Shown: positions 7,101 to 36,670 of the stretch, piece by piece
Numbering within the stretch: the stretch's first letter is position 1
Layout of the letters: every line of letters starts with the position of its first letter
Assembly (NCBI GenBank): GCA_965649765.1
Contig: OZ287752.1
Span: 17,360,001-17,424,000 of the forward strand
Origin: Bispira polyomma
Taxonomy: Eukaryota
Length of the DNA stretch: 64,000 nt
Direction: 5' to 3'
Made by a program: the position numbers and the translations under genes
Notes under the pieces: generated by a model
The model's input: only the letters and a program-made list of their open reading frames with translations
Databases searched by the model: none
Told to the model about the DNA's origin: nothing

Positions 7101-9415
7101 GGCTTGGGTATTTTAAAAATTATTTTATAACTTTTTAAAAGTATGTTTTAACCCACTATGATTTTGTAAATAGACTCTAACATGTATAGGAAATAAACTC
7201 TCTCAAACATTTAACTTATTACATCACTTCCAACCACATATAGTACCTCACTTCATATCCTGACCTTGACTTACCTTTACTTGGGCAAACTGTAGACATC
7301 AAGACCCTAAAGGGGTCTGATACTTCAGTTGACCCCACACACTATATTACAAACTACCTTAACTAAACCCCTGGCGAATAGATCGACTTATTTTGCTCTG
7401 TCCATCCAACCATACACACAGCCAGTTCTTTGTCTTAAGCAACAATACATTTTCCCTCCAAAAGCTCTCCATTAAGCTTCTTGATACTGAAGCATACACA
7501 CGTTAATATGCCCACCTCCTCCCCTTACCACAGCTAAATTAAGTTATTTGCCTTAGAGGCCGAGTGGGGGCTTGTTACAGTCTTCTTCAACCCACCCCTG
7601 AGCATCACGCCTAAGGAGCTAGGATTGAAAATGGGCTCTGAGAGGCTGGATCTACCCTTGCCAGGCGATGGATGCCATTGGCCTCCTGGGCCATGTTATA
7701 CAAATTGCAACCTTCTCATTCGCCCCTCGGGGTTGAGCAATCAATTTTGGCTAGTCTGTGATTTAGCATATAATTGCTGTTAAATTGACTATCAGTGACA
7801 CATATGGGTCCACTGCATTGATATAATTGATGATATACTGTATTAAGATACAGTGGTGGTTTACTGAATATTTGTTAAAAAGGTGTCTGCCTAGTTACGT
7901 TATTGTTGTATAGATAGATACTGTGATAATATTGTAACGGTAGGGGTATTTTAAAAATTATTTTATAACTTTTTAAAAGTATGTTTTAACCCACTATGAT
8001 TTTGTAAATAGACTCTAACATGTATAGGAAATAAACTCTCTCAAACATTTAACTTATTACATCACTTCCAACCACATATAGTACCTCACTTCATATCCTG
8101 ACCTTGACTTACCTTTACTTGGGCAAACTGAGAATGTGTTCTTCATAACCAGTCAATACGCTATATATTTAATGGTATAGATGTGCACCAATTGTTACTA
8201 AAGCAGGTTGAGTTGTTATATATAGGTAAATAAACCAGTATAAATGTATAAATTTGCCCTGTGGGTAACACACTCACATGCAGATAAATGCACTGAGTGT
8301 ACATTTGAATGTAATGATTTACAATTACTCATACCTCTATAGTTATGGTGTATATATTTTTTAAGGTCTACCATCGGTGAGAGGGATATTAGAAGCAAAA
8401 ATATATGAAGATATTGTGGTTTTGTATTGGGAACACATAGATGGAAACTACACAAGAGCTGATTTGCTGAAATGTTACAATGGACAGCAAAATTGCATTT
8501 CAATATACAATATTATTGATACAAGTGTTACAAGATACGCAGTGGATACTGTATATGATGGAGAGGAGTACTATCTTGTGATATATCAGGATACTGATGA
8601 AGTAACAGCTGAACAATTTACTATGACTCACAAAAGTAAGTTTGCCTATGAAAAGAAAAACAGGTCTGCCATATAGGATATAAAAACGTGTTCAATACGA
8701 AAGTACACAATTAATATTAAAATATTTAAAAAATAATTATATATTTGACACTTAACATATTAGAATTAATTGGATTTTAAGGTTTCTTTTTCAGCCCCTT
8801 GTGGAGATATTGTTCACGAGAAAGACACTGGACTAATAGCAGGCATAGCCATTACGTCTGCCATGGTTGGTTTACTTACAGCTTCACAAGTTATACTGAT
8901 TGTATTGTTTAGAAGGAGACAGAACCTAAATGGCGACAATACTAAATGGCCTTCAGTAAGTGAAAATAAGCATGAAATGATATTTAGCAGACTTGTGTCA
9001 CTGACAATGGAATATGTTCAATATGCAATGTGTGTTCTCTCTTTCACCAAGTTTTTTTTCAGTTGCATGCATGTTTGGTAAAATGTTTTTATTTAATTGT
9101 GACATGTACATATTTTTAGAATGAAGGTCCAACAACATATGAAAATGTATCACCTACACATGAAATCGGCAACTATGAGATGACAAAACCAGAAGAACCA
9201 ACACCACCTGCTATGTATACCGATTTGAAGGTATGGTCCCTGCATAATTGATACAACTGAATTAATCACAGCAAATATTATAACTGACTTAGCAAGGATT
9301 TTTTGCATTATTTCTAACTTAACTATTTATATCTATTCTCTTTTTGTTCAGATATTTGCTCTAAATAAGTACTATATTATTATTCCAGCAAGTGACATAT
9401 GAAACCATTAACTGA
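806..9415 (+). CDS. Gene A (5' part lies outside the window): IgSF/FN3 type I membrane receptor with ITSM/ITIM tail; exons 806-1114, 1779-2075, 8366-8635, 8795-8955, 9120-9230, 9389-9415
   Basis: Six exons with the same lengths (309/297/270/161/111/27 nt) and phases as the last six exons of gene B, and clear protein similarity. The first donor is GC (ccag|gctagt). Confidence 0.85.
1352..1420. repeat. poly-C/poly-A low-complexity tract
   Basis: Direct inspection. Confidence 0.9.
1779..2075 (+). CDS. Gene A exon: fibronectin type III domain
   Basis: VPEAPHSL...SVTLSWIPG...SLLPDTEYFFRVKSQN FN3 signature; tttcag| and |gtacc sites. Confidence 0.9.
2113..2524 (+). repeat. Two ~150-bp direct repeats (2113-2263, 2374-2524) with a degenerate tRNA-like core (SINE head or tRNA pseudogene)
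   Basis: A-box-like tagctcaactg and B-box-like ctcgaatccc/ttcgaatacc in both copies. Confidence 0.6.
3025..3849 (+). pseudogene. DIRS gag-like ORF with in-frame stop (TGG>TAG at 3496-3498)
   Basis: KSGRF...LRWANEDW...FDELSLPQW and a C-terminal Cys/His finger CKLFNTGKC...HICWHC; the homolog at 44786-46021 has W at the stop position. Confidence 0.85.
4304..6352 (+). CDS. DIRS reverse transcriptase / RNase H
   Basis: Uninterrupted 682-aa ORF; KLDVSRAFR, FGW, YIDD; RNase H motifs DAC..E..DN..ADALSR. Confidence 0.95.
   Translation: MQVSNLQGDLSPHEVFENYQKDMASVRSHGCTYTEFITNIIDMIIDNDDNDQSGLAAQPVTVAEPVSMQQDNVLSSFTDFFGKTSDFQSEVLKGHKDITDINLPDKNRGFLMLSNSNFIFTGPDRASMLISSVEQMAYIASIIRDTDCPNYKGARIPLISGLKIEQWEIILADHPDKLLIQYLKFGFPLSLNDPTSLKVKEANNHYSALQFKAEVSHYLQKEKVNGTMLGPVENIHSDLYHCSPLLTCPKDLNKRRVILNLSHPQGQSLNDNVDKLLFDGIQFALKFPTIDDIVQQIRITRNPRIFKLDVSRAFRNLRVDPVDAMKLGICFEGGKYVDPAVAFGWVHGSVAFRRCSDIIAYAMEKIGHKVFCYIDDYVGILEENTADKAFQDLHDLVVSLGLPVNADKLSAPDTKITCLGIDIDLIAGTISITKEKIEETHQLCTDIFKNHWISRSKFQSLLGKLLYIHKCVKPARVFINRLLMAFRGKPQAKRFKVTRAMKADIAWFITFLKRYNGITYINSKIDVDINTVYIDACLTGIGGIYNQQVYASPIYNVYNRPLTIVHIEMLNILIALKVWGEQWRHSTINILCDNMAVVLVVGTNKTKDEFLALRLRNIWLLTAEFDITLQIDHVKGKNNCIADALSRIYSEHFSVKEQNVLSREDFVWQQIPLNFFNFDISV
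6359..7097 (+). pseudogene. DIRS tyrosine recombinase with an internal deletion and frameshift near 6435
   Basis: FFGFLRISN, HTFRR and HGLWRSSAVWTY catalytic motifs; the N-terminal segment present in the 41269-41664 copy is missing. Confidence 0.9.
8366..8635 (+). CDS. Gene A exon: second FN3-like or juxtamembrane beta domain
   Basis: IVVLYW...YDGEEYYLVIY; paralog of 25838-26107; canonical splice sites. Confidence 0.85.
8795..8955 (+). CDS. Gene A exon: transmembrane helix
   Basis: GLIAGIAITSAMVGLLTASQVILIVLF followed by RRR. Confidence 0.9.
9120..9230 (+). CDS. Gene A cytoplasmic exon with three tyrosine motifs
   Basis: NEGPTTYENVSPTHEIGNYEMTKPEEPTPPAMYTDLK; tttttag| and |gtatgg; conserved in gene B. 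Confidence 0.85.
9389..9415 (+). CDS. Gene A terminal coding exon (QVTYETIN*, ITIM)
   Basis: ttccag| acceptor; 27 nt identical to gene B 26778-26804. Confidence 0.75.
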   Translation, partial: QVTYETIN

Positions 9416-14689: not shown

Positions 14690-16520
14690 ATACTGTCTTT
14701 TCATTTGAGTTCAGTGACAGAGTAGCCATATTTACACTTCTACACAAGTTAGAGGTACTTCCTGTTTCCATAAGTTTCGCACATAGGTTTATACAGGATT
14801 TTTGATATATTGAATCTAAATATATTCATTCATTTAAAAAATGATATTTGATAGGAATGGCTTTATATAGCCCGTCCACTTGGTAGTTGAGATAAATGAT
14901 TGGTAAAGTTATCTACTGTGAAGTAAGCGTGATAAGCTATTGGGCTAAATTTATTTTATGGAAGTCAGTAATGAGATTTCTGTTTGAGTATTTATTTTAT
15001 ATACATGTTAGTATATGTATACAGGTTAACAATTTGTAAAATAAATGTTTAAAATTTTTTAAATATTAAGCCCCAATAGGGAACTAACACCAACTGACAT
15101 AATCCGCAAACAACATAGGACCAGCCAATTAATAGTTTAGGACTAGCCTGTACATAATAATACATACAAAACCATAATATTTAAAAAGTGTGTTTTACTC
15201 TCATGTTATTTAAACCTCGATAAGTGGATACAATTAAAACTCTAAAATACACGAACGAATAATTATGTCATAAATGGTCTTTTTATTACCACACAAAATA
15301 CATACATTTCCACCATAAACCATGTTTTTCAAGTATACTAACATAATTAGTGCAAAGTGCAAATCATAGCTTGCACCCATTTTATTCTTTACTTGCTTAA
15401 ATTTTTGCTCTGAAACTTTCAGAACAGTCCAAAGTTAGGGTCCTGTCGGTTATGGTTTTGAACTTGTCTTTGGTTTATTATGTGTTGCACTTCAGAAAAT
15501 GCATACCATCAGTCATGTTAAATATACATTACACAATTAAATGTGAACTTTTCTGTCGCTAGTTCTGATTACTAACAGCACATAACCAGAATGTACACTA
15601 CAATAATAATAATACAAAAATGGAATGTAATAACAACAACCTAGTGAATGTCTATAAAATCTAAACAAGAACATTAAAGTCTTTTAACAGTAAATTCAGT
15701 ATACAAGTACATTATAAGGCAAGTTATAATATCTGGTGACAGTGGGAAGAGAAATAAAAGAGGAAAGAAGAAAATGCCGGAAACGTTGCAGACATGATTA
15801 TAAGAAGATGTAGTGGTGAATCCAATTGTTTTACATTCCACAATGGCCCTTTTCATTAAAACGTGTAGGTTTAGCATCATTAAGAAATAACAACCATCTT
15901 AATGAAAATGTCCAATAGAGCCCTCACAAAACAGAGGCCCACTATCTTTATTGATATATTTATGTTTGTTTTAAACGTTGTGAATCTTTGTCCTGAAATG
16001 CTCTCCTGTGTGTACAATGTATTTTTATACACACAATGACAAATGCTTTCCAATGTATCTATTTAAGTTTTATTCTAAGTTGCATTCATTCAAGAATAAT
16101 TTTAACACTTGATAACTCACGAAAACACACATAATTAAATATCAGTATGGCTAAGACTTTGTGAGTGACAAGTAAACATGTACACTTTTGTAAACAGTCT
16201 GTCCAGATTATTATCTAGCTATTGATATTATATATTATGCAGGCCAACAAAGGACAAGGAAGTTATTTACACATGACGTATTTCAGCGAATAGCTAAACT
16301 AAGTACTGATAGTACTGGTGAAAAATTTTATAATATCTTAAATGTTCAAATTTGTTTAATGTGGACATGTTTGTAATCATGGGATTCTACGTAAATATCT
16401 GTCTATCTATTGTTCGGATTGTCACCTTATTTTGTATGTGTTTTATGCATATCTTTGGATATTGAGATTATCTAAAAATAATTGTCAGTGTACTATAGAA
16501 AATTATCACAATATATTATA
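14690..16520 (+). repeat. Upstream region of gene B, segmentally duplicated at ~39635-40817
   Basis: Many colinear shared blocks, e.g. gtacttcctgttt, aaaatgcataccatca, agagccctcacaaaaca, gaatagctaaactaagtactga. Confidence 0.9.
14905..15320. repeat. Interspersed repeat with an inverted copy at ~29815-30240
   Basis: Reverse-complement matches such as aaacctcgataagtggataca/tgtatccacttatcgaggttt and actagcctgtacataat/attatgtacaggctagt; absent from the 39.6-kb paralog. Confidence 0.8.
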
Positions 16521-17221
16521 TTGTATTTAATTATTTATGAAGCAGTATAAATGATGCACTACGTGCTCTAATTCTTTGCTTAGTGATTTCAAAATAAGGA
16601 TACAATCACTACAATTGTGTGTTTTACTATATATTTATTATTTTCAATTTTTGAGTGTATAATAAAAGTAAAACAACCTTGTGCTGCAAATAACTTTAGA
16701 TTATCAATATCAATTAACTGTGTCTTCTCTCCTGATAACATTAAAAAATATACATTCCTCATGTAATTTTCCTCCAGTTGTGTATCCTCCAGGTGGTGTG
16801 AAATATAAAAATGTATGTTTTAAGTGCTACAATAATTATGAACTGTAGAATTTATTCAATATGAAAGTCTATTTCACCTCCTTTATATTTGTTTTTGAAT
16901 CACATTTGAGTGACAACTTTGTACTCTTCTGTTGACATAGTATTGATTTCTGAGAGGTTTCAATGTTAGTGTTTATTTCCAAATGTTTGTGGCATGTTTA
17001 AACCAGAGTAAACAAACAGGGTTTTTTAAGAAGAAAAAGTAAAATAGCACCCTTGTTACATATGTTATCACCCAAAGATACAAACAATTGCTAACCTTGT
17101 ATACTTGGTATTATTGTACATTACCCAGGTATGTCTTGTATTAAGTATATATATATATATATATTTTTTTTTATTCATACATAAAATTAATAGGGTAACA
17201 TATATATGAATACTCTTTTAG

Positions 17222-17602
17222 CTGTATTTGATGTGGGTAATACAGAAGTGACCCAAGTGTCCTACACCACATCCTACCCAGCTGACAGTGGTTACTACAT
17301 ACTGGATGGAGAACAGCTGACACTGGACTGTGTGTTTACAGGAACACTGACCTCACTGGTGTGGTGGACACTAAAGGGAAGTAATGAGCAAATCATACTA
17401 GTTTCTCCTAACAGAGAGGATAACATACCTGACAGTGAGTACAAATCCAGGATAGAAGACTCTACACTGACATCAACTTCTCATCAGTTGGTGATTAGAG
17501 TCAACAAACAACAGGATGAGGAGCAGGAGTTCAGGTGTCGTGTTGTCAAGGAGGATAATATATTTGGATCTGAGAAAGACAGACAACTTGGAGACATTTT
17601 AG
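17222..17602 (+). CDS. Gene B exon: N-terminal V-like Ig domain
   Basis: GEQLTLDC..LVWW..SRI..HQLVI..DEEQEFRC. Confidence 0.9.
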
Positions 17603-20600
17603 GTGAGTTGTGCTATTATGTATTTAGATGTATGTACCTTTTTAATGAGTGAGTCTAGCCAGGACAGGCTCACTCATTGATGTTATACTGCAGATTTGGT
17701 GTTGTGACAGCATTTTTTTGAAATTGGCCCAAAAATTTAACTTCATACTTACTAGGTATCGTTTTTAATTCTTGGGATAATGCAATCAATTTGTTTTCTA
17801 AATAAAGAAACTATAATAATGGTTTTAAAAACAATGACCTGGGTTGACATGAGTTTGACTTATATAGTCACATACTTCACTTTCTAGCCTTGAAAATGGC
17901 TCTATTTATAAAAAGGTCCTATATATGCGAAAAATCAATAAAAATCTGTCTCAGGATCTCTGATACAACTGGAGTGGTACACACTAAAGGGAAGTAATAA
18001 ACTACTCTTAGTTGTGCGTCCTAACACAGAGGATCAAATATTTGACACTGAGTCCAGAATAGAAGACTCTACACTGACATCAACATCTAACCAGTTGGTG
18101 ATTACAGTCAACAAACAACAGGATGAGGAGCAGGAGTTCAGGTGTCGTGTTGTCACTGAGAGGAATATCTTTGGATCAAATAAAGAAAAACAACTGGGCA
18201 AAATTTTAGGTCAGTTATGAAAGGGTTCGATTTTACAACAGGTTGGATATTTTTTAATACACACTTTAACAAATTATAACTACTCTTAGTTGATTAATAT
18301 AGAAATTAAAAAAAAAATACGCCTGTTTAATGTTCATTTTCAACAATTGATTGGGTGGGTTTAGTTTTAATTCACTCCCAGAGATAATTTAAAATGCACA
18401 TAAAACACTCGTTTAAGTATTTTATTTCTATTCTAAAATGATAAACCATTAGCTTTGAATACAATGACACAATGATTACATAAAATGTGTGACTATTATG
18501 AAGACGGTTCCATGTTGTGGCTGTTTCATTGTATAAACATATCACAGCTGAAGTTGAAAAACAAAAGCATTGAAAAATACAAAAATAATGCTGATTATTT
18601 ATTAAAACTACTTACTTTACTAGAGGTAAAACATCATAAAAATCAGTTGAGAAATAGCTTTAATATTTAACAGTTGATATATTTAAGTTTAAATATGGAA
18701 TAGTGTGTCAAGGGAGATTGACGGAACAGCATAAACAACCTATTATGCATTATACTGGGTGTTTTATGCAAATTTAAAACATTGTGCAAAGATGTGTGTT
18801 TTTCTATTGCTCAGCCTACCATTTTAGAATGAGCTTTAAATATAAATTCGTTATCTGCTTCAGTCATTGTTATCAGTACATTTATGTATTTAAATATTAT
18901 AAGAAACAAAAATAGTTTGGGGACATTTATTTTCCAGTGCCATCATCCTCTGTGACACTAGAAGGTCTAGATGTTGTAATAGAAGGTGTACAACAGACCA
19001 TAGAGTGTGAGGTGAACTCAGTTTACAGAGGTCAGGAGGTGACAGAGTTTGGTGTAAAGGTAGGAGAGTCTACACTGACATCTGGTACAAAGACACAGAC
19101 TACAGGGTCAGTGAGTGGGACTTATACTGTAAAGTATAGACAGACTTCAACATTTACCTACAGTGAACACCAGGGTCAACAGGTACAGTGTGAGGTCAAA
19201 TGGATGGAAGGGACAAGTGTAGAGACAGTGAAAACATCTACAGTTGAGACACTTTATATTTATGGTATGTAAATAAAATGTAAAATGATTATTATAATAG
19301 TATTTATACAAAACATTCAGTATATAATTTGCATAATTAGTAGTTGTAAACTAAAGTGTGTGAATAAGGTGTCTCAATAAGGTGTTTGTATCCCAGTTTC
19401 ACATGCCTTTTTTATATTTTGTACATATTATTGTTATGTTTGCTCTTAGTTCGAGCCACAGATGTAACTTTAGATATATCTGACAGTCCAGTACTAGAAG
19501 ACACTCCACTGACCTTCACATGTACCACCTCTAGTATCCCCTTACCCAGACTAAGACTGTACAGACAGAGGGAGGGTCAGTCTGCCACTGTGGTAAAGTC
19601 TGTCACTGATTTGACACTGAGCTGGACTAACAGTATGGAGTCAGCAGACAACAAAGCCGAGTTTTACTGTAGAGTGGATGACAATAAGGACATTGCAGGC
19701 TGGGACTTTCATGTACAGTCAGAGAAACAGGAGATTACTGTGTGGTGTAGGCAATATTTTATTTTGTTTTAGTTCTTAAGCATTTCTTTCTGGGGATAAT
19801 ATACAGACATGTATTTGATTTTTGATTATTGTGCAATAATTCAATACTTTGTTCCTATATTGGAAGTTATTGGGCTTTCAGATTTTCAATTTTAAGTAAT
19901 ATGTGCAAATTTCAGGGAAATATTACTTTTTCAGAATTTTCACAAAATTAAACTGTAGTTCAACCTTGTGCACTGAAAATACTTTATTATTGCTTCAACT
20001 TCAGAGACGCTTTGTTTTGTTTTTCAAAATCAATTTTCTAGTTTTTTGACATTTGCAAATATGTTTTAAGTTTATGAGGTAAAGTTAAACAATCTTAGAA
20101 CTAAACTTATTTATTTTATTTTAGTTTAGTTCTGAGGCATTTATCAATATTTGATACTGCTGACATTATAAGTTGGTGTTGGTTGTTTTTCTTTTAGTTA
20201 AACCTTCCTTGAAATTTAATGCCAACACAAGCCCCAACCCCACAGAAGGAGATATCCGACAGATAGAGTGTATCTCTACATCAGCAAACCCAGAACCTGT
20301 ACTGACTCTGTACAGAGGAGATGTGGAGGTGAAGTCAGTGACAGGGAGAGAACTCAGTTATGGTGTGGAGATAACAAGAGAGATCAATGGTGTGATATAT
20401 AAGTGTACAGCTACTACATCTGATACCCGGAGTTATGACTATAAAGTGTTGTCTGGTGGCAAATATTACACTGTACTATGTGAGTTCCATACATACTTGT
20501 TAATTTGGTTGTCATTGGATTTGTTTTTGCTCTTTCTGTTTCAGAAATAAATTGAGGAGCAATAATTTTAAGAAAATATTCCATTTTGAAAGCCTAATTT

Positions 20601-23600
20601 ATTTCAAAATATCGAAGACAAAATTCACTTCTATTTCAACTGTGTAACTTTTTAAGTCCATTAATAAACTATGTTTAAAGTATCCTGACTTGGATGTTTT
20701 GAACCATCCCGAAAAGTTAAAATGTTCATGCAGAAAGAATATATAACATTTTTTGTGAATATTTAGTAACTATATATGACAAACAAAAATATCTGATATT
20801 TAAATAGTACTTGTCGTATTGTATATGTTGTTGTTTTATACTATATGTACAAACATCTTCTCATGTGTGAATTTTTTTTGCAAAATTTAAAAATTATGCG
20901 AATATTCATTTTAGTTGAATCCATGGAATTAATAATAATCGGTGCTCCCACAGAGTTGTTAGAAGAGGACAATGATATAACAGTGATGTGTAGAACAGAT
21001 GAAGGTAATCCAACACCTACAGTGAGGTGGTATAAAGATGGTCAGACTGTACCTGTAGATACTGCCCTGAAGTCTGTGACTGATAAGGAGATTGATGGTC
21101 AGTACATGGCTAAATATGTGGAGAGTACACTGAAGATACAGACTAGACGTACATTGAATGGAAGGGAATATAGTTGTATGGTGGAAGGTACCAGCCTGGA
21201 AAGGAAATTTACACTTGGAGTAAAGTGTAAGTTACATTTGTTCTATGTTGCTGTTTTATATGAAAATTGTAGCATATATAAAAATATATGAATCAATTTC
21301 ATTGCATTTAAAAATGACGTAAGGTGACAGTGCTTACTTTATAAAAACTCAATTGCTGTGCATATATATTTACAAAAATATAGGTTTTCAAATCTGTATT
21401 TCTTTTGATTCAGGTCTGTGGTAAATATCTACCACTTACACATGCAGTTTTATCACCAAATGCAGAATATATTTTGATATCATGCACATAGTCAAATGTG
21501 TATTGATCAATGCAAATACTAATTCTATATACAAAATTGAAATGAAATTGTGAGACGAGTTAACTGCTTAGAAGAGTTTTTGCATCTTTTATTGTGAATC
21601 AGAAATATTGCTATATAGCATGTGATTCTGATAAACTGGGAATCACACATTTTGAAGGGATCTAAGCATTTTAACACTACCAATTTGATATATTATGTCA
21701 TTTATGTCAAATATGACTGGCTGCTTATGTCTATCATATTGGTGTTGCAGCCCAAAAGGTTTGATAAATTATCATGAAATTAACATAAAATGGGCACAAT
21801 AGTGGATCTACAACTAATAAGGTTATATTCTTCACCATATTAATAATTAGGTTTTATATTTTTCGTTAAAATTATTATTACTGATCCAACCCCTTGATGA
21901 AACGATTCATCTAAACAATCTTAATTTCATTAACTTTTTAAACAAATTGACAGGTTTTCACTTTGTTTAACATTGACAGGAATGATGAAGCTTAAAAAGA
22001 TGTATACATCGTGTCAAAAAAGTTCTTCCCATAATATTTAATAAGGAAATATCCATTAAATCTTGACCTTACAAGATCCTGGTATTGATTAAAAGTGTTA
22101 TATATGGGGCAAATTCCCGACCGCTATAATAAACAGTGTACTTCTTTAGTACACATACACTGGCGCCTGTTGTTTGAATTGAGTGTAACTGAAACTGAAT
22201 TCTTACAAATGTCTTTATTATTTTCATTTAGGTCAGGTTCATCTCAAGCCATTATTTTCCTGCCACTAAACGTTTTCTTGCTGGTTAAAATTAAAGCTCA
22301 GCAGCTCATGTTTTACTTAGTGGCTGTAATTCAGACTGTGCTCTAGTAATTGCACAAACATAATGGTTTTAACAAATAGTAATATGTTAAGTTACATTGT
22401 TTCACAACACACTTATATATAAAACCTCAAACTGCAAAATAGCGACCCAAACAAGGACACAAGTTTGCATGGATATTTATAATATAAGTACTAGCATTAT
22501 AATAGTAAGTACTGTGTATGTTTATCATTAAGTTTATCAAATTTTTCATGTGCTGTTCTTTTATTTGTTAACCATTGGATGAATCTTTTTCATATGTCAT
22601 GTTATATACCTTTGTATTTCATGGACATGATATATACCACTTGCAATTATGTACCTAGTTATTTTCCCAATTTTTCATTGGTTGTTATACTAAGAGATGT
22701 CTGCTCTAATTACTTGTGACGGCAATAAAACAGTTTTGAAGCTAAAATATTTATGTTTGACAGAACTAGGCTGTCATTGATATGAAGACTGTGTGTAGTT
22801 TTACGATGCTAATACTCATCATTGATTGTTATGTCTAAATAGTTTGCATAGGGGTAAATACCAGCAATCGACATATGATCAGATTTCTTACATGCTTGTT
22901 TATTTTGACTCACAAATACACAGTCCAGCAGTGACGTTTTTTTTTTTGTAATTTACTAACGGTATGTAAAAAAACTACCAACTAGCGATCAGATGTTAAT
23001 GTTTTTGCTGGCATGTTATTATGTACAAAACATCTGATCATCATAGAATATAGAAACTGGTCAGTCATTGTCTGATAGTAATTAAAAGTAAATATCAGAA
23101 TTAGCATATCTGCATTATAAATACTTGATTTTAATTTATCTAATCAACAATGTATATATAAAAAAACGTCTGTATCAAACATTTAATATATTTTAACTTT
23201 TTAATGAATCGCTATAATTCAAACTACTTCAGGAAAATAATTTACGTGTAACCAGTTTATACAAACTTAAAATAAAATTGTAAGAATACCAAAGTACCAT
23301 GACTGTTGTATCGTGTCTGAACTAAGCTTATAATATAAAACAATTTATCCTCATAGTTATAATATGTTTCTTGCTTTTTCTATAAATACTGGATACCATA
23401 TGTTTAAACATGATGATTTATCAACTAGAACTGTGCGACTAATATTTTATTTACACAAACTCCATGTTTTATTACAATGGGAAATATAAGATATATATAT
23501 CTTTATAAATTGACTTTTGTTATTTCAGTTTCACATGATGTTGCAGTCATCCAGAGTCCCTCAGATTCTGTGTCAGAAGGTTCAAGTCTGTCCTTGACCT

Positions 23601-26600
23601 GTGAAGCTACAGGAGGTAACCCACCTGAGGTGTTGTCTTATAGCTGGAGTTTTGTACCTCGGTATGAAGAGAGCAGTGATCCGAGTAGTGACACAGACAT
23701 AGAGTTACAGTTTGACAGTGTAGAGTACAGACAGGCTGGGGTGTACAGATGTGAGGTAACTAATGAGGGAGGTGTGAACAATGACAGCGTAGAACTGTTT
23801 GTGCAATGTGAGTAATATAATCATGTAAATATAGTACAATATGACATTGGAGAGTACACACAGGTTTAAATATATATTGGATGTTTTGTATAATATTCAT
23901 TAAATTACAACAATAATGCACATAAGCAAAAAATACAAATTATTGCCAATGTAACAGTTGCGACAATGGTTATATCGCAAAGGCATTAACTTCTTTATGT
24001 TTATAACATACAATATATGATAGAACTCGTGTGCCATATTAGTAATATTTCTGTAGTGTGTCTTCTACTTGAGAAACTTTATGTATTGTTTGTTAAAATT
24101 GTTCCTGTCAGTTTCCCCAGTAGATGTGAGTTCTTCCTTACAGAAGACTGCATATGCAGAAGTAAACATAAAGACTTTACTAAGCTGTACAGTGAGGGCT
24201 TATCCAGCAGTCACTGCTGATCATGTGGATATCATATTTGAAGGTTCTAAAATACCTGCTAATACTATACATGTGGAAGCAGTGGAGGATAAAGTGGATG
24301 AGACTCTTATAGAACTGACATTTGACCCTGTAACATCTGAGGACTTTGGTCTGTATCACGTTGTACTGAATAATGGTGTAGGGGACGAAATTATGGTTGA
24401 ACTAAGCTTGAGCGAACGAGGTGAGTAATCATTTTAAAGTTACAGAAAAAGTTTTTGATTAGGATCAATTATTAGTATAAATGATACATTTTATGTACAT
24501 ATTTGAGAAAGATACTACATATTAGAACACTACTGCTATCGATGATGGAAAAAAATTTCAACAACACTTATAAAAAGGCTTTGTTGTCTAGTAATTTAGT
24601 ATATATTCAGTTATTATACTTTACAGTGTAATTAAACAATTAACCATTGTTAATATATCAAATGTTCTTTGCTTTGTGAGGCTTTATTAGTTGGAGTTAT
24701 AACCTAAAAACTAAGAATATTGCACAAACTAAATCTGGGTAAACACTAGTTAGAGGAGGTCACTTTCAGTTAAGATGTCCATAATGACAAGTACAGAAAC
24801 ATTGTAGGGTATTATTTATTCGATACTTTACTTTGGAGATTAGCACCGACTTGGCATACAATATCTGGGTTATATCTCAAGTAGCATGAGATGTTTGTTG
24901 TAACAATTATCTCTAAAATGGTATAGCTCAAAATAAGGCAGAGCATTAATATTATCAATAATATTAGTTAGTTACTTCACATTTATTGATTAACTATTCA
25001 ATTACATATACATGTTTTTAGGTGTACCAGAAGCACCACATTCTTTGGTATTTGAGTCAGTAACTGCCATATCAGTAACCCTCTCTTGGATTTCTGGTCA
25101 GAGTCGTGGTGTAGAACAAACCTTTACAGTGTATTACAGACATCAAGGGGACACCAAAATACTATATCATGATGAAATCCGGACCATTGAAAATAAGAAA
25201 ATAAATGTATACAAAGTCTCAAGTTTATTACCTAATACTGAGTATTTCTTTAGAGTTAAAGCACAAAACCAATATGGAGAAAGTGAGCATCAACCTGAGA
25301 TATCAGTTACAACTTTAGGTACCTGCATTTGTTAAATTATACCACCATTATTACTTAATAAATACATATATTTGTCCAATGAGCTTTACAATTCATATGT
25401 ATTCTCCATGTTGTTTTTGTACAGTAATAATATACAATATTATGGTATATATGTACATGACATAGGCAGCAATTCGAACTTCTAAATACAAAAGTTTATA
25501 ATTATATATGCGGCATTGTGGGTAACACTTGTCCCTAGTAATGCACAGGTCCTAGTTTCAGTCCCAACTGCGTTCTTTAATGTATAGATAGGTACCACAT
25601 AAAATTGCGGTTCTCTGCCGTTTACTTCTGTCCTTAGTGGCAGATAAAAAACCTTGGGGATGTTGATGTTTTCATTCTCAAGTTTCTGTCTTCAGTTAGT
25701 AAAATGATGGTTGGCTGTAGTTGAGTAGATAATGACAGATAAATGAATTAACTATACATAGAAATCAAATACAAATTATCCCTCAAATATATCATTTACC
25801 ATATTTTTAGAGTTATATTTTCTAATATTTATGCTAGGATTACCATCAATGAAAGGGATATTGGAGGCACACCTATATAAAGAAATTGTGGTCTTGTACT
25901 GGGGACACATAGATGGGAATTACACAAGAGCTGCTTTATTGAAGTGTAACAATGGACGACAAAATTGCTTTTTAGTTTACAACATTACTGATGTCATTGT
26001 TACAATTTTTACAGTCTACACTGTATATGATGGAGAAGAGTACTATCTTGTAATATATCAGGATAATGATGAAGTAATAGCCCAAAAGTTTACCATGACA
26101 GACAAAGGTAAATTTAACTGTAAAAAACATGTTTGTCATACAGAAATATGGATACCATAACTTCTTCACTATAAACTGCATAATTTGTATAAATGTTCGA
26201 AGTTTAATTTTTCTCTTTGTAGCACCTTCTGCAGATATCATTAAAGAAAAAGACACTGGACTGATAGCGGCACTTGTAGTTACATCTACAATGGTTGGTG
26301 TACTTGCAGTTGCCCTAATTATACAGATTATTTGCCACAAAATGAGACTGAGGCATAATGATGACAATAACAATGGGTTTTCTGTAAGTAATAACAAGCA
26401 CAACACTATAATTAACAGACTCATATCATTCACAATCAGTAAGTGTTAATTGGTTACAGTTACTTCTGGTAACATGTTTATATTTTGTTGTGATATATTT
26501 TACAGAATCAAGGTCCAACAACATATGAAAATGTACCATCTACACATAAAATCAGCAACTATGAAATGACAAAACCAGAAGAACAAACACCAACGGCTGA

Positions 26601-26804
26601 ATATACAGATTTGAAGGTATGACCATCACATAATTGATACAAGAAAAATAATAACACCCAAATAGTATAACTGACAGAGAACAGATTTTTTTGAGTTGTT
26701 TAAACTTAATTATTTAAATGTTATTTTTTTTTCAGATATAAAATGTGTACTAAATGTGTACAATATTATTATTTCAGCAAGTGACATATGAAACCATTAA
26801 CTGA
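17222..26804 (+). CDS. Gene B: nephrin-like architecture IgSF receptor (7 Ig + FN3 + FN3-like + TM + ITSM/ITIM tail), ~1017 aa plus an unresolved leader; exons 17222-17602, 18938-19264, 19450-19746, 20198-20479, 20915-21226, 23529-23807, 24112-24420, 25022-25318, 25838-26107, 26223-26383, 26506-26616, 26778-26804
   Basis: All exons are open with canonical AG/GT; ectodomain exons are phase 1-1 with lengths divisible by 3; Ig C..W..C signatures. Confidence 0.9.
17955..18209 (+). pseudogene. 5'-truncated duplicate of the V exon (orphan half-V segment)
   Basis: Near-identical SRIEDSTLTSTS.QLVI.VNKQQDEEQEFRCRVV; lacks the first Cys strand; donor tttag|gtcagt retained. Confidence 0.85.
18938..19264 (+). 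CDS. Gene B Ig domain 2 exon
   Basis: IEGVQQTIEC...HQGQQVQC; canonical sites. Confidence 0.9.
19450..19746 (+). CDS. Gene B Ig domain 3 exon
   Basis: EDTPLTFTC..SIPLP..DNKAEFYC. Confidence 0.9.
20198..20479 (+). CDS. Gene B Ig domain 4 exon
   Basis: IECISTSANPEP..INGVIYKC. Confidence 0.9.
20915..21226 (+). CDS. Gene B Ig domain 5 exon (C2/CD80-like)
   Basis: VMCRTDEGNPTPTVRWY..LNGREYSC. Confidence 0.9.
23529..23807 (+). CDS. Gene B Ig domain 6 exon (I-set-like)
   Basis: EGSSLSLTCEATGGNP..YSW..QAGVYRCEVTN. Confidence 0.9.
24112..24420 (+). CDS. Gene B Ig domain 7 exon
   Basis: LLSCTVRAYP..EDFGLYHVVL; gtcag| and |gtgagt. Confidence 0.9.
25022..25318 (+). CDS. Gene B FN3 exon
   Basis: SVTLSW..LLPNTEYFFRVKAQN. 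Confidence 0.9.
25838..26107 (+). CDS. Gene B FN3-like or juxtamembrane domain exon
   Basis: Paralog of 8366-8635, same length. Confidence 0.85.
26223..26383 (+). CDS. Gene B transmembrane exon
   Basis: GLIAALVVTSTMVGVLAVALIIQIIC-HKMR. Confidence 0.9.
26506..26616 (+). CDS. Gene B cytoplasmic exon
   Basis: NQGPTTYENVPSTHKISNYEMTKPEEQTPTAEYTDLK. Confidence 0.85.
26778..26804 (+). CDS. Gene B terminal coding exon (QVTYETIN*)
   Basis: tttcag| acceptor; in frame with the preceding phase-0 donor. Confidence 0.75.
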   Translation, partial: QVTYETIN

Positions 26805-29179
26805 AGAATTGCTGCTTCAAATATGGATATCCCAAAGCATAACAGAGACATATATAGCAATAATATCAATGACTTGAGAAATGTTTTTATGGTAAAATAT
26901 TGCACAACCTTAACAAATACTTGTACTTTGTCTTCTGTATTCCCTAGTTATAGACCACATTGTACCATATATATACTTCACTAATCTTTTTATTTAATAT
27001 TCATTTCAGTATATCATAATATAAATACTTTTTTGGTATCATCTTGAAATTCAGAGAATATTTTACTTGCAAGGCTAAATCATTTTATCCTGTAACATCA
27101 AGCCCATCGTTAGAGCTGCATTTATGTGTATTCTATCACTTAAATAAATCACTTTCATGAAAACTCAACAGCCGATTATTCTTGGGGAAAATAGGTGTAC
27201 TCATCATTTGCAATATGCAGTGGAACAAATAAATAGTGAAGTAATTTTCGAACTCTTTAAGTCTTAGAATTGACTGGTACCAAACCTGAGTGACATAATC
27301 ATTGTGTAATTCACAAATAACCAACTGAAGTCAATCAAGCCATCTCAATCATCATGCCAAACTTAATTACATCTTATGGTAGCAAAAACAAAGGACATGC
27401 ATGCTAAAAAACATTTATCACATTTTGCATTTCTTGAAATATATGGCAAACAGTAGGGTTATAAATGACTATTACAAGCAGTTGGTCTTACCGATGTGTC
27501 TGATGTTATGTATACCAATGTTTCTTGGTTTGCATTATACTGCAAAGCTTATACAGCAGGATATAACCCATGTTTTTCGATTTGCATTATACTGCAAAAT
27601 CTATACTACATATAATAACTTGTATATTGCACCTTCTTTTCAAACAATGTGCGTTACATATGGTAGGTATCTTTTGTAAAATGAAGGAATTGCCTGTTAC
27701 TGACAACGTTTGTAACATTTTCTGACTAAATGCACTTTTGCAGGATTGGATAATCATTTGGTTGCCTAGAAACATGTTTGCATCATTGCAGATTTTGCTG
27801 ATGTTGTCATTAAATAAGATTTTAGTTCTGCTGTTTAGGGCTCCCACTTAATAGTTATTCTTTGTGGATTGTACTTCGTGGATAAAGTTGTATAACACTA
27901 ACCTGTCTGGCAGGTACAGCTCTTGGTGCCTTAAATCAGCATAAGTTACTAATGTTGGCTGAGTATAATAAACTTAACAGCTTTTGTATTGTAGTTTTAA
28001 TTAAATTAGTGCACCCAATCTTTTTGAACTGAAACATATTGAGTAAACACTTTGTCTATAAAGGCCATTTGCTAGCTCACATTTGGTCGACGTTTATATC
28101 CATATATTAAAGAGCCATTTTCCTATTAAATTCAATATCAGATGATATCAGAATTGTACTGGCCTAACTCTTTAAATAATCTAATCTCAGGATCATAATA
28201 TATTCAGCTATAATGCATGGTGTAAAGCTTTAGCTAAATTTACACATAATTTAGCCATCACTGACCGAAACCATTCTAAGGTTTGCCTGGCTTGAATCTT
28301 CGACTGCTATTAAATCCAACTATTGATGTCTGATACAGTAGGAAGACATTAGCTTATTGGCATAGTGATTAAAATGCATGTAAAAGGAAACTGGCTTTGA
28401 AATGAAATGTTTATAGTAAATTCTACCATTAAATAAAACTACAAGTTTCTAAATAAGTAAAACAATAAAGACACAAAACAGCATTGGTATATGTTAAAAG
28501 TTTCAATTAAGATTGCATTACATTAGTGGACATACCAGTGCCCAGTTATGACTGATATAAGTCATAATTATAATAAAAAAATTTAAGGGGCATAAAATTA
28601 TGATTAAATAAAAAATACACGTTGTGTGAACAACACTAAAAGTCCCATAAATAATTGCAATACAAAGTTTTTGAGTTATGACTTTACATATGACTTCTCA
28701 TGTAATGCTGTTACTAATGTATACACAAGCCCTTATATCTGTAAACGTGCTCCATGAATTAATTTATAGTGAGATTTTTAAGAGGACATTTTGATGCGTG
28801 TTTGCACAACAGGCCCCTTTAGGGCACTGATAGTTCAATCCACACCTTAAAGTTTATATACTTTACAACCTTAAATTTAGCTTTATCTGCACACCCCCAA
28901 AAATATGTATCAACCCTCAGCCAATCACAGCCCACACACATGCAGCTTAAGCTTCACTTTACAAACTCCATATTGAAATGGCCATTTTAAACTTCGATTT
29001 CATCAAGAAAACGAGTAGAAAATATTTGAAACCCACCACCTCCCCTAATCACAGCACATTGCTAGACTGGTGATCAATATTTTGTGATGATTGGATTTGG
29101 AGTAAGAATATATATGTGTTTCTATGTCTTAACTTACTTAGGTAATACTTTCCCTTAGGAAACTGGTTAGTGGATAAAC

Positions 29180-32990: not shown

Positions 32991-35900
32991 TATGTCTTGG
33001 ATATTTTGTACATGTTATTGCGTTGTTATACCTTTATTACAGCCAAAGCGGCTTGGTATGATGAATCCTCACATGTCTGGCACTATGACCTAGTGTGTAA
33101 TGCACTCATTGGATGTGTATAACTATTCAAACTTATACCATGCATTGTTAGGTCAATCCATCAAAGTTAATTGATTTTGCAATTTTTCTGTAAACCAAAG
33201 AAATATTCACTTAAATGTCTTAATTTTTTTTTCTTATTGTTGGTCATTTATTTTATGTTTAATGACACCACAGATACCAAGCTTCACAGTATTACCCACT
33301 TTTCAAGAGAACACAGATATTTCCGTCCAGTGTAAAGTGTCAACAGTAAAACCAGGGAAGGGAAGTATCCAGTTTACTGTCAGAGTAGTTCCAGACTTTA
33401 GTGTTGAGAGTTCAGACAGTGAGTTGTCAGAAGAAGAGGTAGACTCTAATACAGGAGCTGTGTCAGTGAGTTACACTACAGAGATCAGACTACAGAGAAA
33501 ACACAATGGGCAGGATACAGTGTGTGAACTAGAGTGGAGAGGAGAAACCTTTACTTCTAATACACAACAGGCTAATGTTGAATGTAAGTGGTAAATTAGT
33601 TATATTATGTAGCTAGGTTTTTAAATTAGTAAATATTACTAGTTAATTAAGGAGTGACCTTTGTTCAACAGTAATAGATGGTACTCTGACTTTATGATAC
33701 CATTGTTCTTCAGTGTTTAATTAAATAAATGCTATATCTCTTTCAGTCAAAGCCTATCAATTGGCTATAGATGGTGAACCAACAGACTTAGTAGAAAAGA
33801 ACACAGGTATAACAGTGGTGTGTAGAACAGATGAAGGTAATCCTACACCCACAGTGAGGTGGTACAGAGGTGACCAGACTGTACCTGTAGATACTGACTT
33901 GGAGGTTGTAACTAATATGGAGACTGATGGTTCACTGTACAATGGTAAAGTGAGTGTAAGTACACTTAGTCTACAGGTTGATAGCACTCTAAATGAAAAA
34001 AGTGTATAGATGTAATGTAGAAGATACTAGTTTAAAGGAATAATTTGAACTGGAAGTGGCATGTAAGTTATTATAATTAATTTTAAGTGAATTCAACAGG
34101 TAAATCTAGATGTTTGTGAAAGAAAGATTTGTAACTGTCCCAAATTAATAGTAGGAGAGTGATTAGTTACTATTAAATCACATAAAGATATGAAGCACTA
34201 TATGCTACCGAGGGTATGAAAATGTTAAGACTTGACATTACTGTTTAGGTTCATCAGAGATTGGGGAAGAAGGTCCATTAACATCTTCAATATAGAAATA
34301 TGTTATAACATACATCCTGTTGTTTTATTTTTCATTTTTTTTATCCTTTATGATATCAACAGGATAAGCAAGGTTATCAAAAATAAATAATGTCAGATAG
34401 AACATTTTGTCCTGACTAATAAACAATGCTAAATGAATATATGTTCATTCACTTTGTATTATTTCAAAACTATGTCATCTATATGTTGTTGTTTTTTTTT
34501 GCAGTCGGTTAAGTATTTGAAAAATATAGTATCTGGATGAATTGAAAAAGTGTTTTTACTCAAATAAAATGTGTCAAAACATGATGTAGAAGTTTTTTTA
34601 ACTAACTGAAACTAATTTAATTAAGAAATTTCAATGAAAATAGATATTATTATTATTGCAAAAAATTATCAATGGAAGTTACAATAGTAACCAAGCATAT
34701 TTTTGTTTTCATCTGCCACTTTGGTTTAATGGGTATCACTACACCTCTTCGTCATCAGGTATTTTCACCTACTTTAACTTCAACAACTTCTCTAACACAA
34801 TATGAATGGTATGAGATTGTTATAGATGCAAATAGACTACAATAGACGAATATCATAACATAAAATACACAATGTAGCTACAGAATTATGGAATACTTTT
34901 ATTACCACCATTTACTGACCATCACCTTCTTAGGCATATTAAGGAGGATTGAGAATATATTTATAACTTTTCTCACTATCTCTTTTCAGCGTCACAGTGT
35001 GAATGGTACTTTAATATTGAATATTTAATATTTTTGATTTAAATATTACTGCTCTAGGTAACGGTAAGCTAATACTGTTTTCAGATATTTGTAAGGATGT
35101 TTTAATATACAACATCCTGGATTAACTTCATTCTAACGTTTGATCCTGGAGAAATTACTTTGACCTGAAGTCATTGTCCTCACTGGATCTCAGGAAGTAC
35201 ATGTTACTTTTCAAATTAATACTGTTGGGATATTCTGCCTGATACAATTTTGGCAGATATTTTAAAAATCAAAGAAATACATGCAGAATTCATTGATGTA
35301 ACTACGAATCTACAAGAAGTGTGTCAGCAAAACAAACTATCAGTGTAAATGATTTGCAGTTTGCTCTGATGCAACATATATATTTCTGAGCATAAAATCA
35401 AACTGTTACTATATCTCAGAGGTTGAATATTGTTCAAAAAAGTTCTGATTAAATTATGTTTGTACCAATAGTTAAACAAACACATAAAATGTTCACCAAT
35501 AAACTAAGCTCTGTGTGAAAGAGGTTACTTGGACCTATTCTACTTTACTTTTTTGAAAATATACTTCATTTATCTATTACTTATATTCTTCTAAACAGAA
35601 AGATATATTGCATATTTCATTTTTGTATAATAGGGAAACATAAGTGAGGTGTGCCAGCATTATGTCACAACAGAAAGGCGTTTCTCTTAGGTTTGTTCAC
35701 AATATGACATTCCTCTGTAGATTTGAAATTGTGTGACGTCACGATACAAGAATCGTTGTAGCTCTGTTTTAAACACTGTGGTACATAATATTAAGGTTTG
35801 AAAAAATGCATATAAAATGGTTAAAACCATTTTAAGACTGCCATAGTAAGCATATAGGCTAAACAAAACATTCATCAATGTATTATGAATCTCTGCCGGC

Positions 35901-36399: not shown

Positions 36400-36670
36400 G
36401 TGTGTTATGTTAGTGGGAAATCGGCAGTGAAAGATACAGTAACACTGGCTGGTACATGTAAGTAATATATTTAAGTTGAGTGTTATGTTAGGGATTTAAC
36501 AGTCACACTGGATCTTAGATGTAAGTAATATATTTAGGTGGTGTTTTATGTTAACTGGACGTTATTTTAGACACTATGATACTAGATAAAAGATGTAAGT
36601 AAAAGATTCAGGTGGAATTTTACATCAGTGAAAGTTTTAAATACTGTATTGTTGAAAGTTACATGTAATA
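36400..36670 (+). repeat. Degenerate tandem copies of the exon 3' end and splice donor
   Basis: gtgttatgttag...acactgg...atgtaagtaatatattt repeated 3-4 times. Confidence 0.7.

What the first reader, a model, noticed from the sequence alone, without database searches (positions are those of the whole stretch)
26506..26804. Four-tyrosine cytoplasmic tail hidden in small exons: TTYENV (ITSM, also YxN), NYEM, YTDL, VTYETI (ITIM)
Seen: splicing 26506-26616 to 26778-26804 (and 9120-9230 to 9389-9415) gives a 45-aa segment with all four tyrosines conserved. The last 27 nt are identical between paralogs while the TM exon is much more diverged. Established: TxYxxV/I is the ITSM consensus, (I/V/L/S)xYxx(I/V/L) is the ITIM consensus, and pYxN is the Grb2 SH2 motif. 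The YTDL-to-YETI spacing is only 4 aa, too short for a canonical ITAM. Inference: SHP2-type inhibitory or switch signalling under purifying selection.
Basis: partly seen in the sequence, partly recalled or inferred. Interest (0 to 1): 0.8.

Follow-up and report, generated by a model that had tools for sequence, protein, structure and literature searches.

The report
Conserved four-tyrosine receptor signalling tail

Summary
Exons 26506-26616 and 26778-26804 (gene B) and 9120-9230 and 9389-9415 (gene A) have AG/GT borders. They join the transmembrane exon in phase 0 and encode a tail with TTYENV, NYEM, EYTDL and VTYETIN-stop.

The same two-exon tail occurs at 60 or more places in this genome, almost all on one chromosome. 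It also occurs in a second species' assembly. Each tyrosine is kept in 24 of 25 intact close paralogs, and the spacings Y2-Y3 (14) and Y3-Y4 (8) do not vary in any copy examined. Tail exons are 86-89% identical between paralogs against 65-71% for flanking non-coding DNA. dS is similar across exons, while dN/dS is lowest in the tail (0.16-0.43) and highest in the transmembrane exon (0.72-0.83).

Purifying selection and the terminal ITIM hold. The ITSM-defining Thr is not conserved, whereas the Grb2-type Asn is. The most conserved residue is the unassigned Y of NYEM. An SHP-2 orthologue exists in the genome.

No RNA data were available, so the junctions rest on comparative evidence only. SHP-2 and Grb2 binding remains inference.

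The scan had already met this family at other clusters (s1-627045, s1-694762).

The parts
26506..26616 (+). Gene B tail exon 1 (37 codons, phase 0/0). It carries Y1 (TTYENV), Y2 (NYEM) and Y3 (EYTDL).
   Evidence: ag|..|gt borders and an open frame. Homologous exon at 69 places in the genome. AG and GT are kept in 30/30 close copies.
26778..26804 (+). Gene B terminal micro-exon QVTYETIN plus TGA, carrying Y4 (ITIM).
   Evidence: ag acceptor and stop codon. Found 100-700 bp downstream of tail exon 1 in all 30 close copies. Of these, 26 have an AG acceptor and an open 8-codon frame ending in a stop. Also found in divergent subfamilies and in species 2.
26223..26383 (+). Gene B transmembrane plus juxtamembrane exon. 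It starts in phase 1 and ends in phase 0 at GTAAGT.
   Evidence: Sequence reading. The in-frame donor is kept in 25/26 paralogs. Fastest-evolving exon, dN/dS 0.72-0.83.
25838..26107 (+). Gene B membrane-proximal domain exon (89 aa, two invariant Cys, no Pfam match).
   Evidence: The AlphaFold2 model is all-beta with 7 strands but of low confidence (pLDDT 59.6).
25012..25335 (+). Gene B fibronectin type III exon. The coordinates are those of the ORF that contains it.
   Evidence: PF00041, E = 8.8e-13.
17206..24428 (+). Gene B ectodomain Ig exons. Ig1 is V-like at 17206-17652. The others lie at 18937-19272, 19386-19772, 20173-20550, 20845-21291, 23477-23815 and 24069-24428. The coordinates are those of the containing ORFs.
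   Evidence: Ig-type Pfam matches and the ORF list.
15902..16007 (+). Candidate leader (signal peptide) exon of gene B. Tentative.
   Evidence: ATG, a hydrophobic core and a phase-1 GT donor compatible with the Ig1 acceptor. The surrounding region is 80% identical to 40178-40816. Not otherwise tested.
9120..9230 (+). Gene A tail exon 1.
   Evidence: 98/111 nt identical to gene B.
9389..9415 (+). Gene A terminal micro-exon QVTYETIN plus TGA.
   Evidence: 27/27 nt identical to gene B.
8795..8955 (+). Gene A transmembrane exon.
   Evidence: 71% nt and 48% aa identity to gene B.
8366..8635 (+). Gene A membrane-proximal domain exon.

Best explanation
The two small exons encode the conserved C-terminal signalling tail of a large, tandemly expanded, lineage-specific family of type I surface receptors. 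The architecture is a V-like Ig domain, about six further Ig domains, FN3, an unnamed beta-rich membrane-proximal domain, a TM segment and the tail. The tail is most likely an unstructured phosphotyrosine docking cassette. After ligand engagement, a Src-type kinase would phosphorylate the four tyrosines. Y4 ([VI]-T-Y-E-x-I, a canonical ITIM at the extreme C-terminus) would recruit the genome's SHP-2 orthologue. Y1 (Y-E-N-V) would recruit a Grb2-type adaptor through pYxN. The readers of Y2 (Y-E-M-T) and Y3 (E-Y-[TAS]-D-L) are unknown; Csk- or Src-type SH2 domains are candidates. The net output would be inhibitory or modulatory, as in CD22, PECAM-1, BTLA or SIRP-alpha. Shown here: exon structure, phase compatibility, family size, purifying selection, invariant Tyr spacing, presence in a second species, and presence of SHP-2 and Csk genes. 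Inferred: expression, splicing at RNA level, phosphorylation, the identity of the readers, and the direction of signalling.
For: Exons, borders and frames. There are 69 genomic matches to tail exon 1, about 30 of them strong. AG/GT is kept in 30/30 and the terminal exon was found in all 30 (26 with acceptor and frame intact). The phase-0 donor of the TM exon is kept in 25/26. Each Tyr is kept in 24/25 or 24/24, with synonymous TAT/TAC variation at three of them. Tail exons are 0.855 and 0.890 identical between paralogs, against 0.65-0.71 for the flanking introns and 3' flank. dS is 0.28-0.39 in all exons, while dN/dS is 0.16-0.22 (tail 2), 0.30-0.43 (tail 1), 0.37-0.42 (membrane-proximal) and 0.72-0.83 (TM). 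Divergent subfamilies, and most of the species-2 loci examined, keep the two-exon plan, the four Tyr and spacings of 14 and 8. Three of the four copies that lost a Tyr or its codon also carry other disabling lesions: L015 has a frameshift, and L028 and L030 have stops. The fourth, L011, is otherwise open. An SHP-2 orthologue is present (N-SH2 exon against PTPN11, E = 8e-40, with a second SH2 and a PTP exon on the same strand), as is a Csk SH2. In CD22 the pY in YENV binds Grb2 while ITIMs bind SHP-1 (PMC6286995).
Against: There is no RNA evidence. No RNA run holds the stretch, and the runs found are genomic DNA. No transcript-derived or annotated protein with this tail was found among 1.84 billion representatives; only genomic ORF fragments turned up. 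SH2 specificities are inferred from vertebrate consensus motifs. Y2, the most conserved Tyr, fits no named motif. The ITSM Thr is not conserved. The ectodomain resembles adhesion-type IgSF proteins (Robo, neurofascin, Dscam, SYG-2), for which tyrosine tails are often activating or adhesive rather than inhibitory. At least a third of the close copies are pseudogenes, so some of the conservation reflects youth.
Confidence: 0.6

Rival explanations
1. The tyrosines are mainly YxxPhi sorting and endocytosis signals read unphosphorylated by the AP-2 mu subunit. The tail would control surface level and turnover of the receptor rather than SH2 signalling.
For: YENV, YTDL and YETI all fit YxxPhi. The tail is short and lies close to the membrane.
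Against: The only invariant Tyr (YEMT) does not fit YxxPhi. Positions that AP-2 does not need are conserved: Asn at +2 of Y1, V/I at -2 of Y4, and Glu at -1 of Y3. Four signals with fixed spacings of 14 and 8 are more than sorting needs.
Confidence: 0.12
2. The tail is a positive or adhesion-type signalling module, like nephrin/SYG-2-type or growth-factor-type docking sites. It would couple ligand binding to Grb2-Ras, Src or cytoskeletal pathways rather than to phosphatase-mediated inhibition.
For: The conserved pYxN site is a Grb2-type site. The Ig5 exon is most similar to Robo, neurofascin, Dscam and SYG-2 domains. The architecture of many Ig domains plus FN3 is typical of adhesion molecules. 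SHP-2 is itself a positive Ras/MAPK regulator in many pathways (established knowledge).
Against: A canonical ITIM at the extreme C-terminus is conserved in nearly all copies and in species 2. The family has 60 or more tandem copies with many pseudogenes and very variable N-terminal Ig exons. That pattern is typical of immune or recognition receptor families, not of conserved neural adhesion genes.
Confidence: 0.2
3. The exons are not used. The conservation would reflect recent duplication or gene conversion, and the mature mRNA would end elsewhere, for example by read-through of the TM exon donor.
For: No RNA data. A and B are homologous through their introns as well. Many copies are pseudogenes.
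Against: Exons are 15-25 points more conserved than the introns between them, at equal dS. Splice sites, phase and the stop codon are conserved over 30 copies, over divergent subfamilies at about 50% identity, and in another species whose non-coding DNA gave no DNA match in this genome. Indels in tail exon 1 are multiples of three in intact copies.
Confidence: 0.04

Closest known systems
CD22 (Siglec-2), vertebrate B-cell inhibitory co-receptor
   Same: A type I receptor with an N-terminal V-like Ig domain followed by six more Ig domains. Its tail combines a YENV site (binds Grb2) with ITIMs (bind SHP-1) (PMC6286995). The literal YENV is the same here.
   Different: No detectable sequence homology: the V exon has no significant match in the PDB sequence search. 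This family adds an FN3 and an unnamed membrane-proximal domain. Its tail is much shorter (about 60 residues with the juxtamembrane part), with four rather than six Tyr. Sialic acid binding was not examined.
PECAM-1 (CD31), BTLA and SIRP-alpha tails
   Same: Multi-tyrosine tails that recruit SHP-2 through ITIM and ITSM pairs. BTLA additionally has a Grb2 site. In PECAM-1 the tail is encoded by several small exons that can be skipped. All of this is from own knowledge, not checked here. The Tyr-Tyr distances of 22 (Y2-Y4) and 26 (Y1-Y3) here lie in the range used by tandem SH2 domains in those receptors (own knowledge).
   Different: Unrelated sequences. The ITSM Thr is not conserved here. The YxxL-x4-YxxI doublet and the YEMT site have no counterpart.
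Botryllus fester co-receptors (FcoR) and Hydractinia Alr proteins
   Same: Large, clustered invertebrate IgSF families with many pseudogenes, whose tails carry ITIM, ITAM or hemITAM and other Tyr motifs. Motif exons can be removed by alternative splicing in FcoR. Alr proteins have an FN3-like membrane-proximal fold (PMC12582321, PMC9546547).
   Different: In Hydractinia the tails are more divergent than the ectodomains (PMC9546547). Here the tail is the most conserved part, and one uniform four-Tyr cassette is shared by the whole family. No ITAM or hemITAM is present. The phylum differs and there is no sequence relationship. No link to allorecognition is shown.
Oyster CgIgIT2 and related molluscan IgSF receptors
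   Same: A lophotrochozoan multi-Ig transmembrane receptor with an immunoreceptor tyrosine motif (review PMC11999971).
   Different: CgIgIT2 is described with a classic ITAM and five Ig domains. This family has an ITIM plus pYxN, no ITAM, and an FN3.

Membership tests
ITIM-bearing receptors (motif class) | [I/V/L/S]-x-Y-x-x-[I/V/L] in the cytoplasmic tail | tested here: met
   VTYETI at Y4. Across close paralogs: V at -2 in 23/24, Y in 24/24, I at +3 in 24/24. Variants HVTYEVI, NITYEDI, NITYEAI, HVNYDNI and HITYEVV occur in subfamilies and species 2. One species-2 copy has M at -2.
ITIM-bearing receptors (motif class) | Tyr phosphorylation and recruitment of SHP-1/SHP-2 or SHIP | not testable with these tools
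   Only the presence of an SHP-2 orthologue gene was shown.
ITSM-bearing receptors (SLAM/PD-1 type) | T-x-Y-x-x-[V/I], conserved | tested here: inconclusive
   Met literally in genes A and B (TTYENV). However, Thr at -2 is present in only 18/25 close paralogs and absent from divergent subfamilies and all five species-2 copies.
ITSM-bearing receptors (SLAM/PD-1 type) | SAP/EAT-2-type single-SH2 adaptor that gives the 'switch' | not tested
   No search for a SAP-like gene was made.
Grb2-binding pYxN sites (as in CD22 YENV; ITT is YxNM) | Asn at +2 of the Tyr | tested here: met
   Asn in 24/25 close paralogs and in at least 90% of the 40 aligned sequences. Kept as YENV, YENA, YANV or YYN in subfamilies and species 2. 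Binding itself was not tested, and a Grb2 orthologue was not searched for.
ITAM | YxxL/I-x(6-8)-YxxL/I | tested here: not met
   The YTDL-KQVT-YETI spacer is 4 residues and is invariant. No other Tyr pair fits.
hemITAM | [E/D][E/D][E/D]-x-Y-x-x-L (definition as in PMC12582321) | tested here: not met
   Y3 is preceded by P-[PT]-A-E, with a single acidic residue at -1.
Siglec / CD22 family | Sequence homology of the N-terminal V-set domain and the Ig chain to Siglecs | tested here: not met
   For the V exon, the best PDB sequence match has E = 0.033 (a TCR alpha V domain) and there is no Siglec among the hits. Pfam gives only generic Ig families.
Nephrin / SYG-2 / Kirrel-type adhesion IgSF | Specific homology of Ig domains plus one FN3 and a long Tyr-rich tail | tested here: inconclusive
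   The Ig5 exon matches SYG-2 (E = 3.8e-10), but it matches Robo, neurofascin and Dscam equally or better. The tail shows no similarity.

The most novel reading that the evidence does not exclude
The four-tyrosine cassette, with invariant spacings (Y2-Y3 = 14, Y3-Y4 = 8) and an invariant, unassigned YEM site, is a new, lineage-specific immunoreceptor signalling module. It would be read bidentately by tandem SH2 proteins and shared by 60 or more receptors with highly variable ectodomains. That is the hard-wired inhibitory arm of a germline-diversified self/non-self or pathogen recognition system in a lophotrochozoan, evolved independently of vertebrate ITIM receptors.
Probability: 0.15. Interest if true: 0.8.

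Novelty: new variant of a known kind. Interest (0 to 1): 0.5.

Why it matters
Invertebrate IgSF expansions with ITIM-like motifs are usually reported as scattered motif hits in divergent tails. Here one uniform tail is the best-conserved part of a family of 60 or more genes whose outer domains vary widely. This is the arrangement of vertebrate inhibitory receptor families such as KIR, LILR and Siglec. It gives a concrete, testable handle on whether phosphatase-based inhibitory signalling was recruited independently for recognition receptors outside chordates and cnidarians. The handle consists of four defined tyrosines plus the species' own SHP-2 and Csk genes. The family analysis also shows that the motif a reader would flag first (the ITSM) is not the conserved one. 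The unassigned YEM site and the fixed spacings are the features under the strongest constraint.

Tried and rejected
RNA support:
- The look-up of sequencing runs found no RNA run, only three runs of one study.
- Read laying showed these are genomic contigs that cover the introns. Their three single-contig "joints" do not coincide with the splice sites.

Cross-species search:
- The profile of 40 tail exons against 1.84 billion proteins gave 8 hits. One (P0001) is a low-complexity repeat and was rejected. Seven are short genomic ORFs; the five looked up all come from a single ENA assembly, and none is a full-length or transcript-derived protein.
- The word search with one of these hits found only itself.

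Joined sequence:
- The two exon translations were placed end to end only inside a local shuffle count.

Readings considered and rejected:
- ITAM: spacer of 4 residues.
- hemITAM: no acidic triplet.
- NPxY/PTB site: no N-P-x-Y.
- YxxM p85 site: Met is at +2, not +3.
- C-terminal PDZ ligand: the last residue varies among N, G, S, H and GSA.

Other checks:
- Gene conversion as the cause of the 27/27 identity is rejected as the main cause. dS in the tail exons equals that of other exons, and the 160-nt intron between them is only 75% identical.
- Positive selection on the N-terminal Ig exons was not detected with pooled pairwise dN/dS (0.33-0.48, few usable pairs). This coarse test cannot exclude it.
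- Structure prediction of the membrane-proximal domain gave too low a confidence for a fold search.
- The species could not be identified with the tools at hand.
Full report
OBSERVATION

The window is AT-rich animal DNA (31-44% GC) from contig C5 of a 1.035-Gb genome. At 26506-26616 an open 111-nt exon is bounded by ...ttacag| and |gtatga. At 26778-26804 a 27-nt exon follows ...atttcag| and ends in TGA. The paralogous pair lies at 9120-9230 and 9389-9415.

A versus B identity is 98/111 nt for the first exon and 27/27 nt for the second.

The upstream transmembrane exon (B 26223-26383, A 8795-8955) ends at a codon boundary followed by GTAAGT. TM, tail exon 1 and tail exon 2 therefore join in phase 0. 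The ectodomain exons use phase 1, as is usual for Ig-superfamily genes.

GENE CONTEXT

Gene B is a complete-looking type I receptor gene. It has a V-like Ig exon, six further Ig exons, an FN3 exon (PF00041, E = 8.8e-13), an 89-residue membrane-proximal exon with no Pfam match, the TM exon and the two tail exons. A candidate leader exon lies at 15902-16007 (tentative).

Gene A enters the window at its seventh Ig exon. It carries a DIRS-type retroelement in the intron between the FN3 and membrane-proximal exons. A third, truncated copy at 33.7-37.5 kb has Ig exons only, with no FN3, TM or tail.

FAMILY

A six-frame search of the whole genome with tail exon 1 gave 69 matches, which is a lower bound. 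About 30 have E < 1e-5. All but two lie on C5, in clusters at 12.96-13.10 Mb, 17.02-17.54 Mb and 18.3-25 Mb.

In the 30 best copies:
- AG and GT flank tail exon 1 in 30/30. Indels in intact copies are +3 or -3 nt.
- A QVTYETIN-stop-type micro-exon lies 100-700 bp downstream in all 30. In 26 of them the AG acceptor and an open 8-codon frame ending in a stop are intact.
- The TM exon ends at the same in-frame GT[AG]AGT donor in 25 of the 26 copies where it was found.
- Among 25 intact tails, each of Y1, Y2 and Y3 is kept in 24/25 and Y4 in 24/24. TAT/TAC synonymous variation occurs at three of them.
- Three of the four copies that lost a Tyr or its codon have other lesions: L015 has a frameshift, and L028 and L030 have stops. 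The fourth, L011 (Y3 to C), is otherwise open.
- At least ten of the 30 copies show stops, frameshifts or a lost donor in the last four exons. This is a birth-and-death family.

SELECTION

Mean pairwise nucleotide identity is 0.855 (tail 1) and 0.890 (tail 2). The figures are 0.65 for the intron upstream, 0.71 for the roughly 140-nt intron between the two tail exons, and 0.65 for the 3' flank.

Pooled Nei-Gojobori estimates give similar dS in all exons (0.28-0.39). dN/dS is 0.16-0.22 for tail 2, 0.36-0.43 for tail 1, 0.37-0.42 for the membrane-proximal exon and 0.72-0.79 for the TM exon. Within eight genes of the 17-Mb cluster, tail 1 has the lowest ratio of all exons (0.30) and TM the highest (0.83).

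For A versus B specifically, the TM exon (71%) is no better conserved than the introns (73-75%), while tail 1 is 88% and tail 2 is 100% identical. Equal dS and poorly conserved intervening introns argue against gene conversion as the main cause. These are pooled pairwise figures that include some pseudogenes, so they are conservative but not independent.

DEEPER CONSERVATION

Twenty weaker genomic matches were fetched. They fall into subfamilies at about 50% identity that keep the same plan:
- ASYENVV...YEMT[KQ]PEEP...GEY[AST]DLK, then HVTYEVIG-stop.
- VYYN[NS]P...HYEMTQHEEPKP.AEYADLK, then NITYEDIGSA-stop.
- HYENVAQP.VYEMTKPEEPNPPAEYADLQ. No terminal exon was identified for this group.

In the alignment of 40 tail-1 exons the only invariant column is Y2.

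A profile search of 1.84 billion protein representatives returned seven true hits. All are short ORFs that run from the exon into the intron. The five that were looked up all lie on long contigs of a single ENA assembly.

That assembly is another species. Its Ig and FN3 exons match this genome at 74-78% nt identity (up to 87% in short stretches), and no match to its non-coding DNA was found. There too, tail exon 1 ends ...EY[T]DLK|gt or ...EYTELS|gt, and in four of five loci it is followed by ag|NITYEAIS, QMTYEAIS, HVNYDNIH or HITYEVVG plus a stop.

In every copy examined, Y2-Y3 is 14 residues and Y3-Y4 is 8 residues, the latter across the intron. The N-terminal Ig exons differ strongly between paralogs (25-50% aa identity, or no counterpart at all), while FN3, the membrane-proximal domain and the tail are kept. 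A constant inner module therefore sits under a variable outer one.

WHAT THE MOTIFS SUPPORT

- Y4 is a canonical ITIM almost everywhere.
- Y1 is literally an ITSM in genes A and B. Its defining Thr at -2 is present in only 18/25 close paralogs and is lost in the other subfamilies and in species 2. Asn at +2 and Val at +3 persist. The conserved information is therefore that of a pYxN (Grb2-type) site. In CD22 the pY of YENV binds Grb2 while the ITIMs bind SHP-1 (PMC6286995).
- Y3 keeps E-Y-[T/A/S]-D-L. It is not an ITIM by its -2 residue.
- Y2 (Y-E-M-T-[KQ]-P-E-E-P) is the most conserved and fits no named motif.
- A composition-preserving shuffle gives ITSM plus ITIM on different tyrosines in 0.22% of trials. 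The family-wide conservation is the stronger argument.

READERS

The genome encodes an SHP-2 orthologue. Two SH2 domains lie at C3:64046776-64048304 (minus strand), with a PTP exon at 64026942-64027067 on the same strand. The N-SH2 exon matches human PTPN11 at E = 8e-40, against 8e-29 for PTPN6.

A Csk-type SH2 lies at C2:38828639-38828857 (E = 1.4e-30 to CSK). Grb2 was not specifically sought.

WHAT COULD NOT BE SHOWN

No RNA run holds the stretch. The three runs found cover the introns at even depth and are DNA. The junctions, expression, phosphorylation and binding partners therefore remain inference.

The only end-to-end use of the two translations was the local shuffle count.

COMPARISON AND NOVELTY

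By function, the closest analogues are CD22 (V plus six Ig domains, YENV plus ITIMs), PECAM-1, BTLA and SIRP-alpha. Among invertebrates they are Botryllus FcoR (ITIM and hemITAM, swapped by splicing; PMC12582321), Hydractinia Alr (ITAM and ITIM in some tails, FN3-like membrane-proximal fold; PMC9546547) and oyster CgIgIT2 (ITAM; PMC11999971).

None is related by sequence. Unlike Hydractinia, where tails diverge faster than ectodomains, the tail here is the most conserved exon. I file it as a new variant of a known kind, namely IgSF receptors with immunoreceptor tyrosine motifs.

The scan had already noted the same family at the 13-Mb cluster (s1-627045 and s1-694762; the latter is my locus L014) and on this window (s1-680830). 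My results agree with those notes on family size and tail conservation. I could not reproduce positive selection on the outer domains with the coarse test used.

VERDICT

Interest is moderate (0.5): a solid and clean family-level result, but one that rests on motif inference, lacks RNA evidence, and concerns a family already met elsewhere in this scan.

Noticed in passing
window 3025-7100 (+) and 42500-45400 (-): A DIRS-type retroelement sits inside the FN3-to-membrane-proximal intron of gene A. It has gag-like ORFs, a 682-aa pol ORF and a tyrosine-recombinase-like ORF. A diverged copy (66-71% nt) lies on the other strand further on, with 218-nt (2564-2781 / 7293-7510) and 187-nt repeats flanking it.
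   Followed up: no
window 17951-18217: An orphan second copy of the 3' half of the V-like Ig1 exon (70-77% aa to 17339-17612) lies just downstream of the intact exon.
   Followed up: no
window 33725-37556: A third, truncated paralog. Only Ig5-like, another Ig and Ig6-like exons are present. No Ig7, FN3, TM or tail exons were found downstream in the window.
   Followed up: partly
window 25838-26107 (gene B) and 8366-8635 (gene A): The membrane-proximal 89-residue domain has two invariant Cys and a YDGEEYYL.IYQD core but no Pfam match. The AlphaFold2 model from 18 paralogs is all-beta with seven strands but of low confidence (pLDDT 59.6), so it is probably a divergent FN3- or Ig-like sandwich.
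   Followed up: partly
window 26805-26835 and the same place in 27 paralogs: The first 25-30 nt after the stop codon (consensus AGAATTGCTGCTTCAAACC...) are conserved at 0.6-1.0 per column, clearly better than the rest of the 3' flank. This may be a 3'-UTR regulatory element.
   Followed up: partly
G000:C3:64026942-64048304 (-), loci L074 and L075: SHP-2 (PTPN11) orthologue: N-SH2, C-SH2 and PTP exons on one strand over about 21 kb. The N-SH2 exon matches PTPN11 at E = 8e-40.
   Followed up: partly
G000:C2:38828639-38828857 (-), locus L076: A single-exon SH2 domain whose best match is Csk (E = 1.4e-30).
   Followed up: partly
L011 / L062 (G000:C5:17016664-17026663): A paralog with Y3 changed to Cys (AECTDLK) but no stops in any matched exon from Ig3 to the tail. 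It is a possible natural variant lacking one docking site.
   Followed up: partly
window 26617-26622: In gene B the intron after tail exon 1 starts GTA TGA. Retention of this intron would end the protein one residue after YTDLK and remove the ITIM. Tail exon 1 is symmetric (111 nt), so skipping it would leave an ITIM-only tail. No RNA data are available to test either isoform.
   Followed up: no
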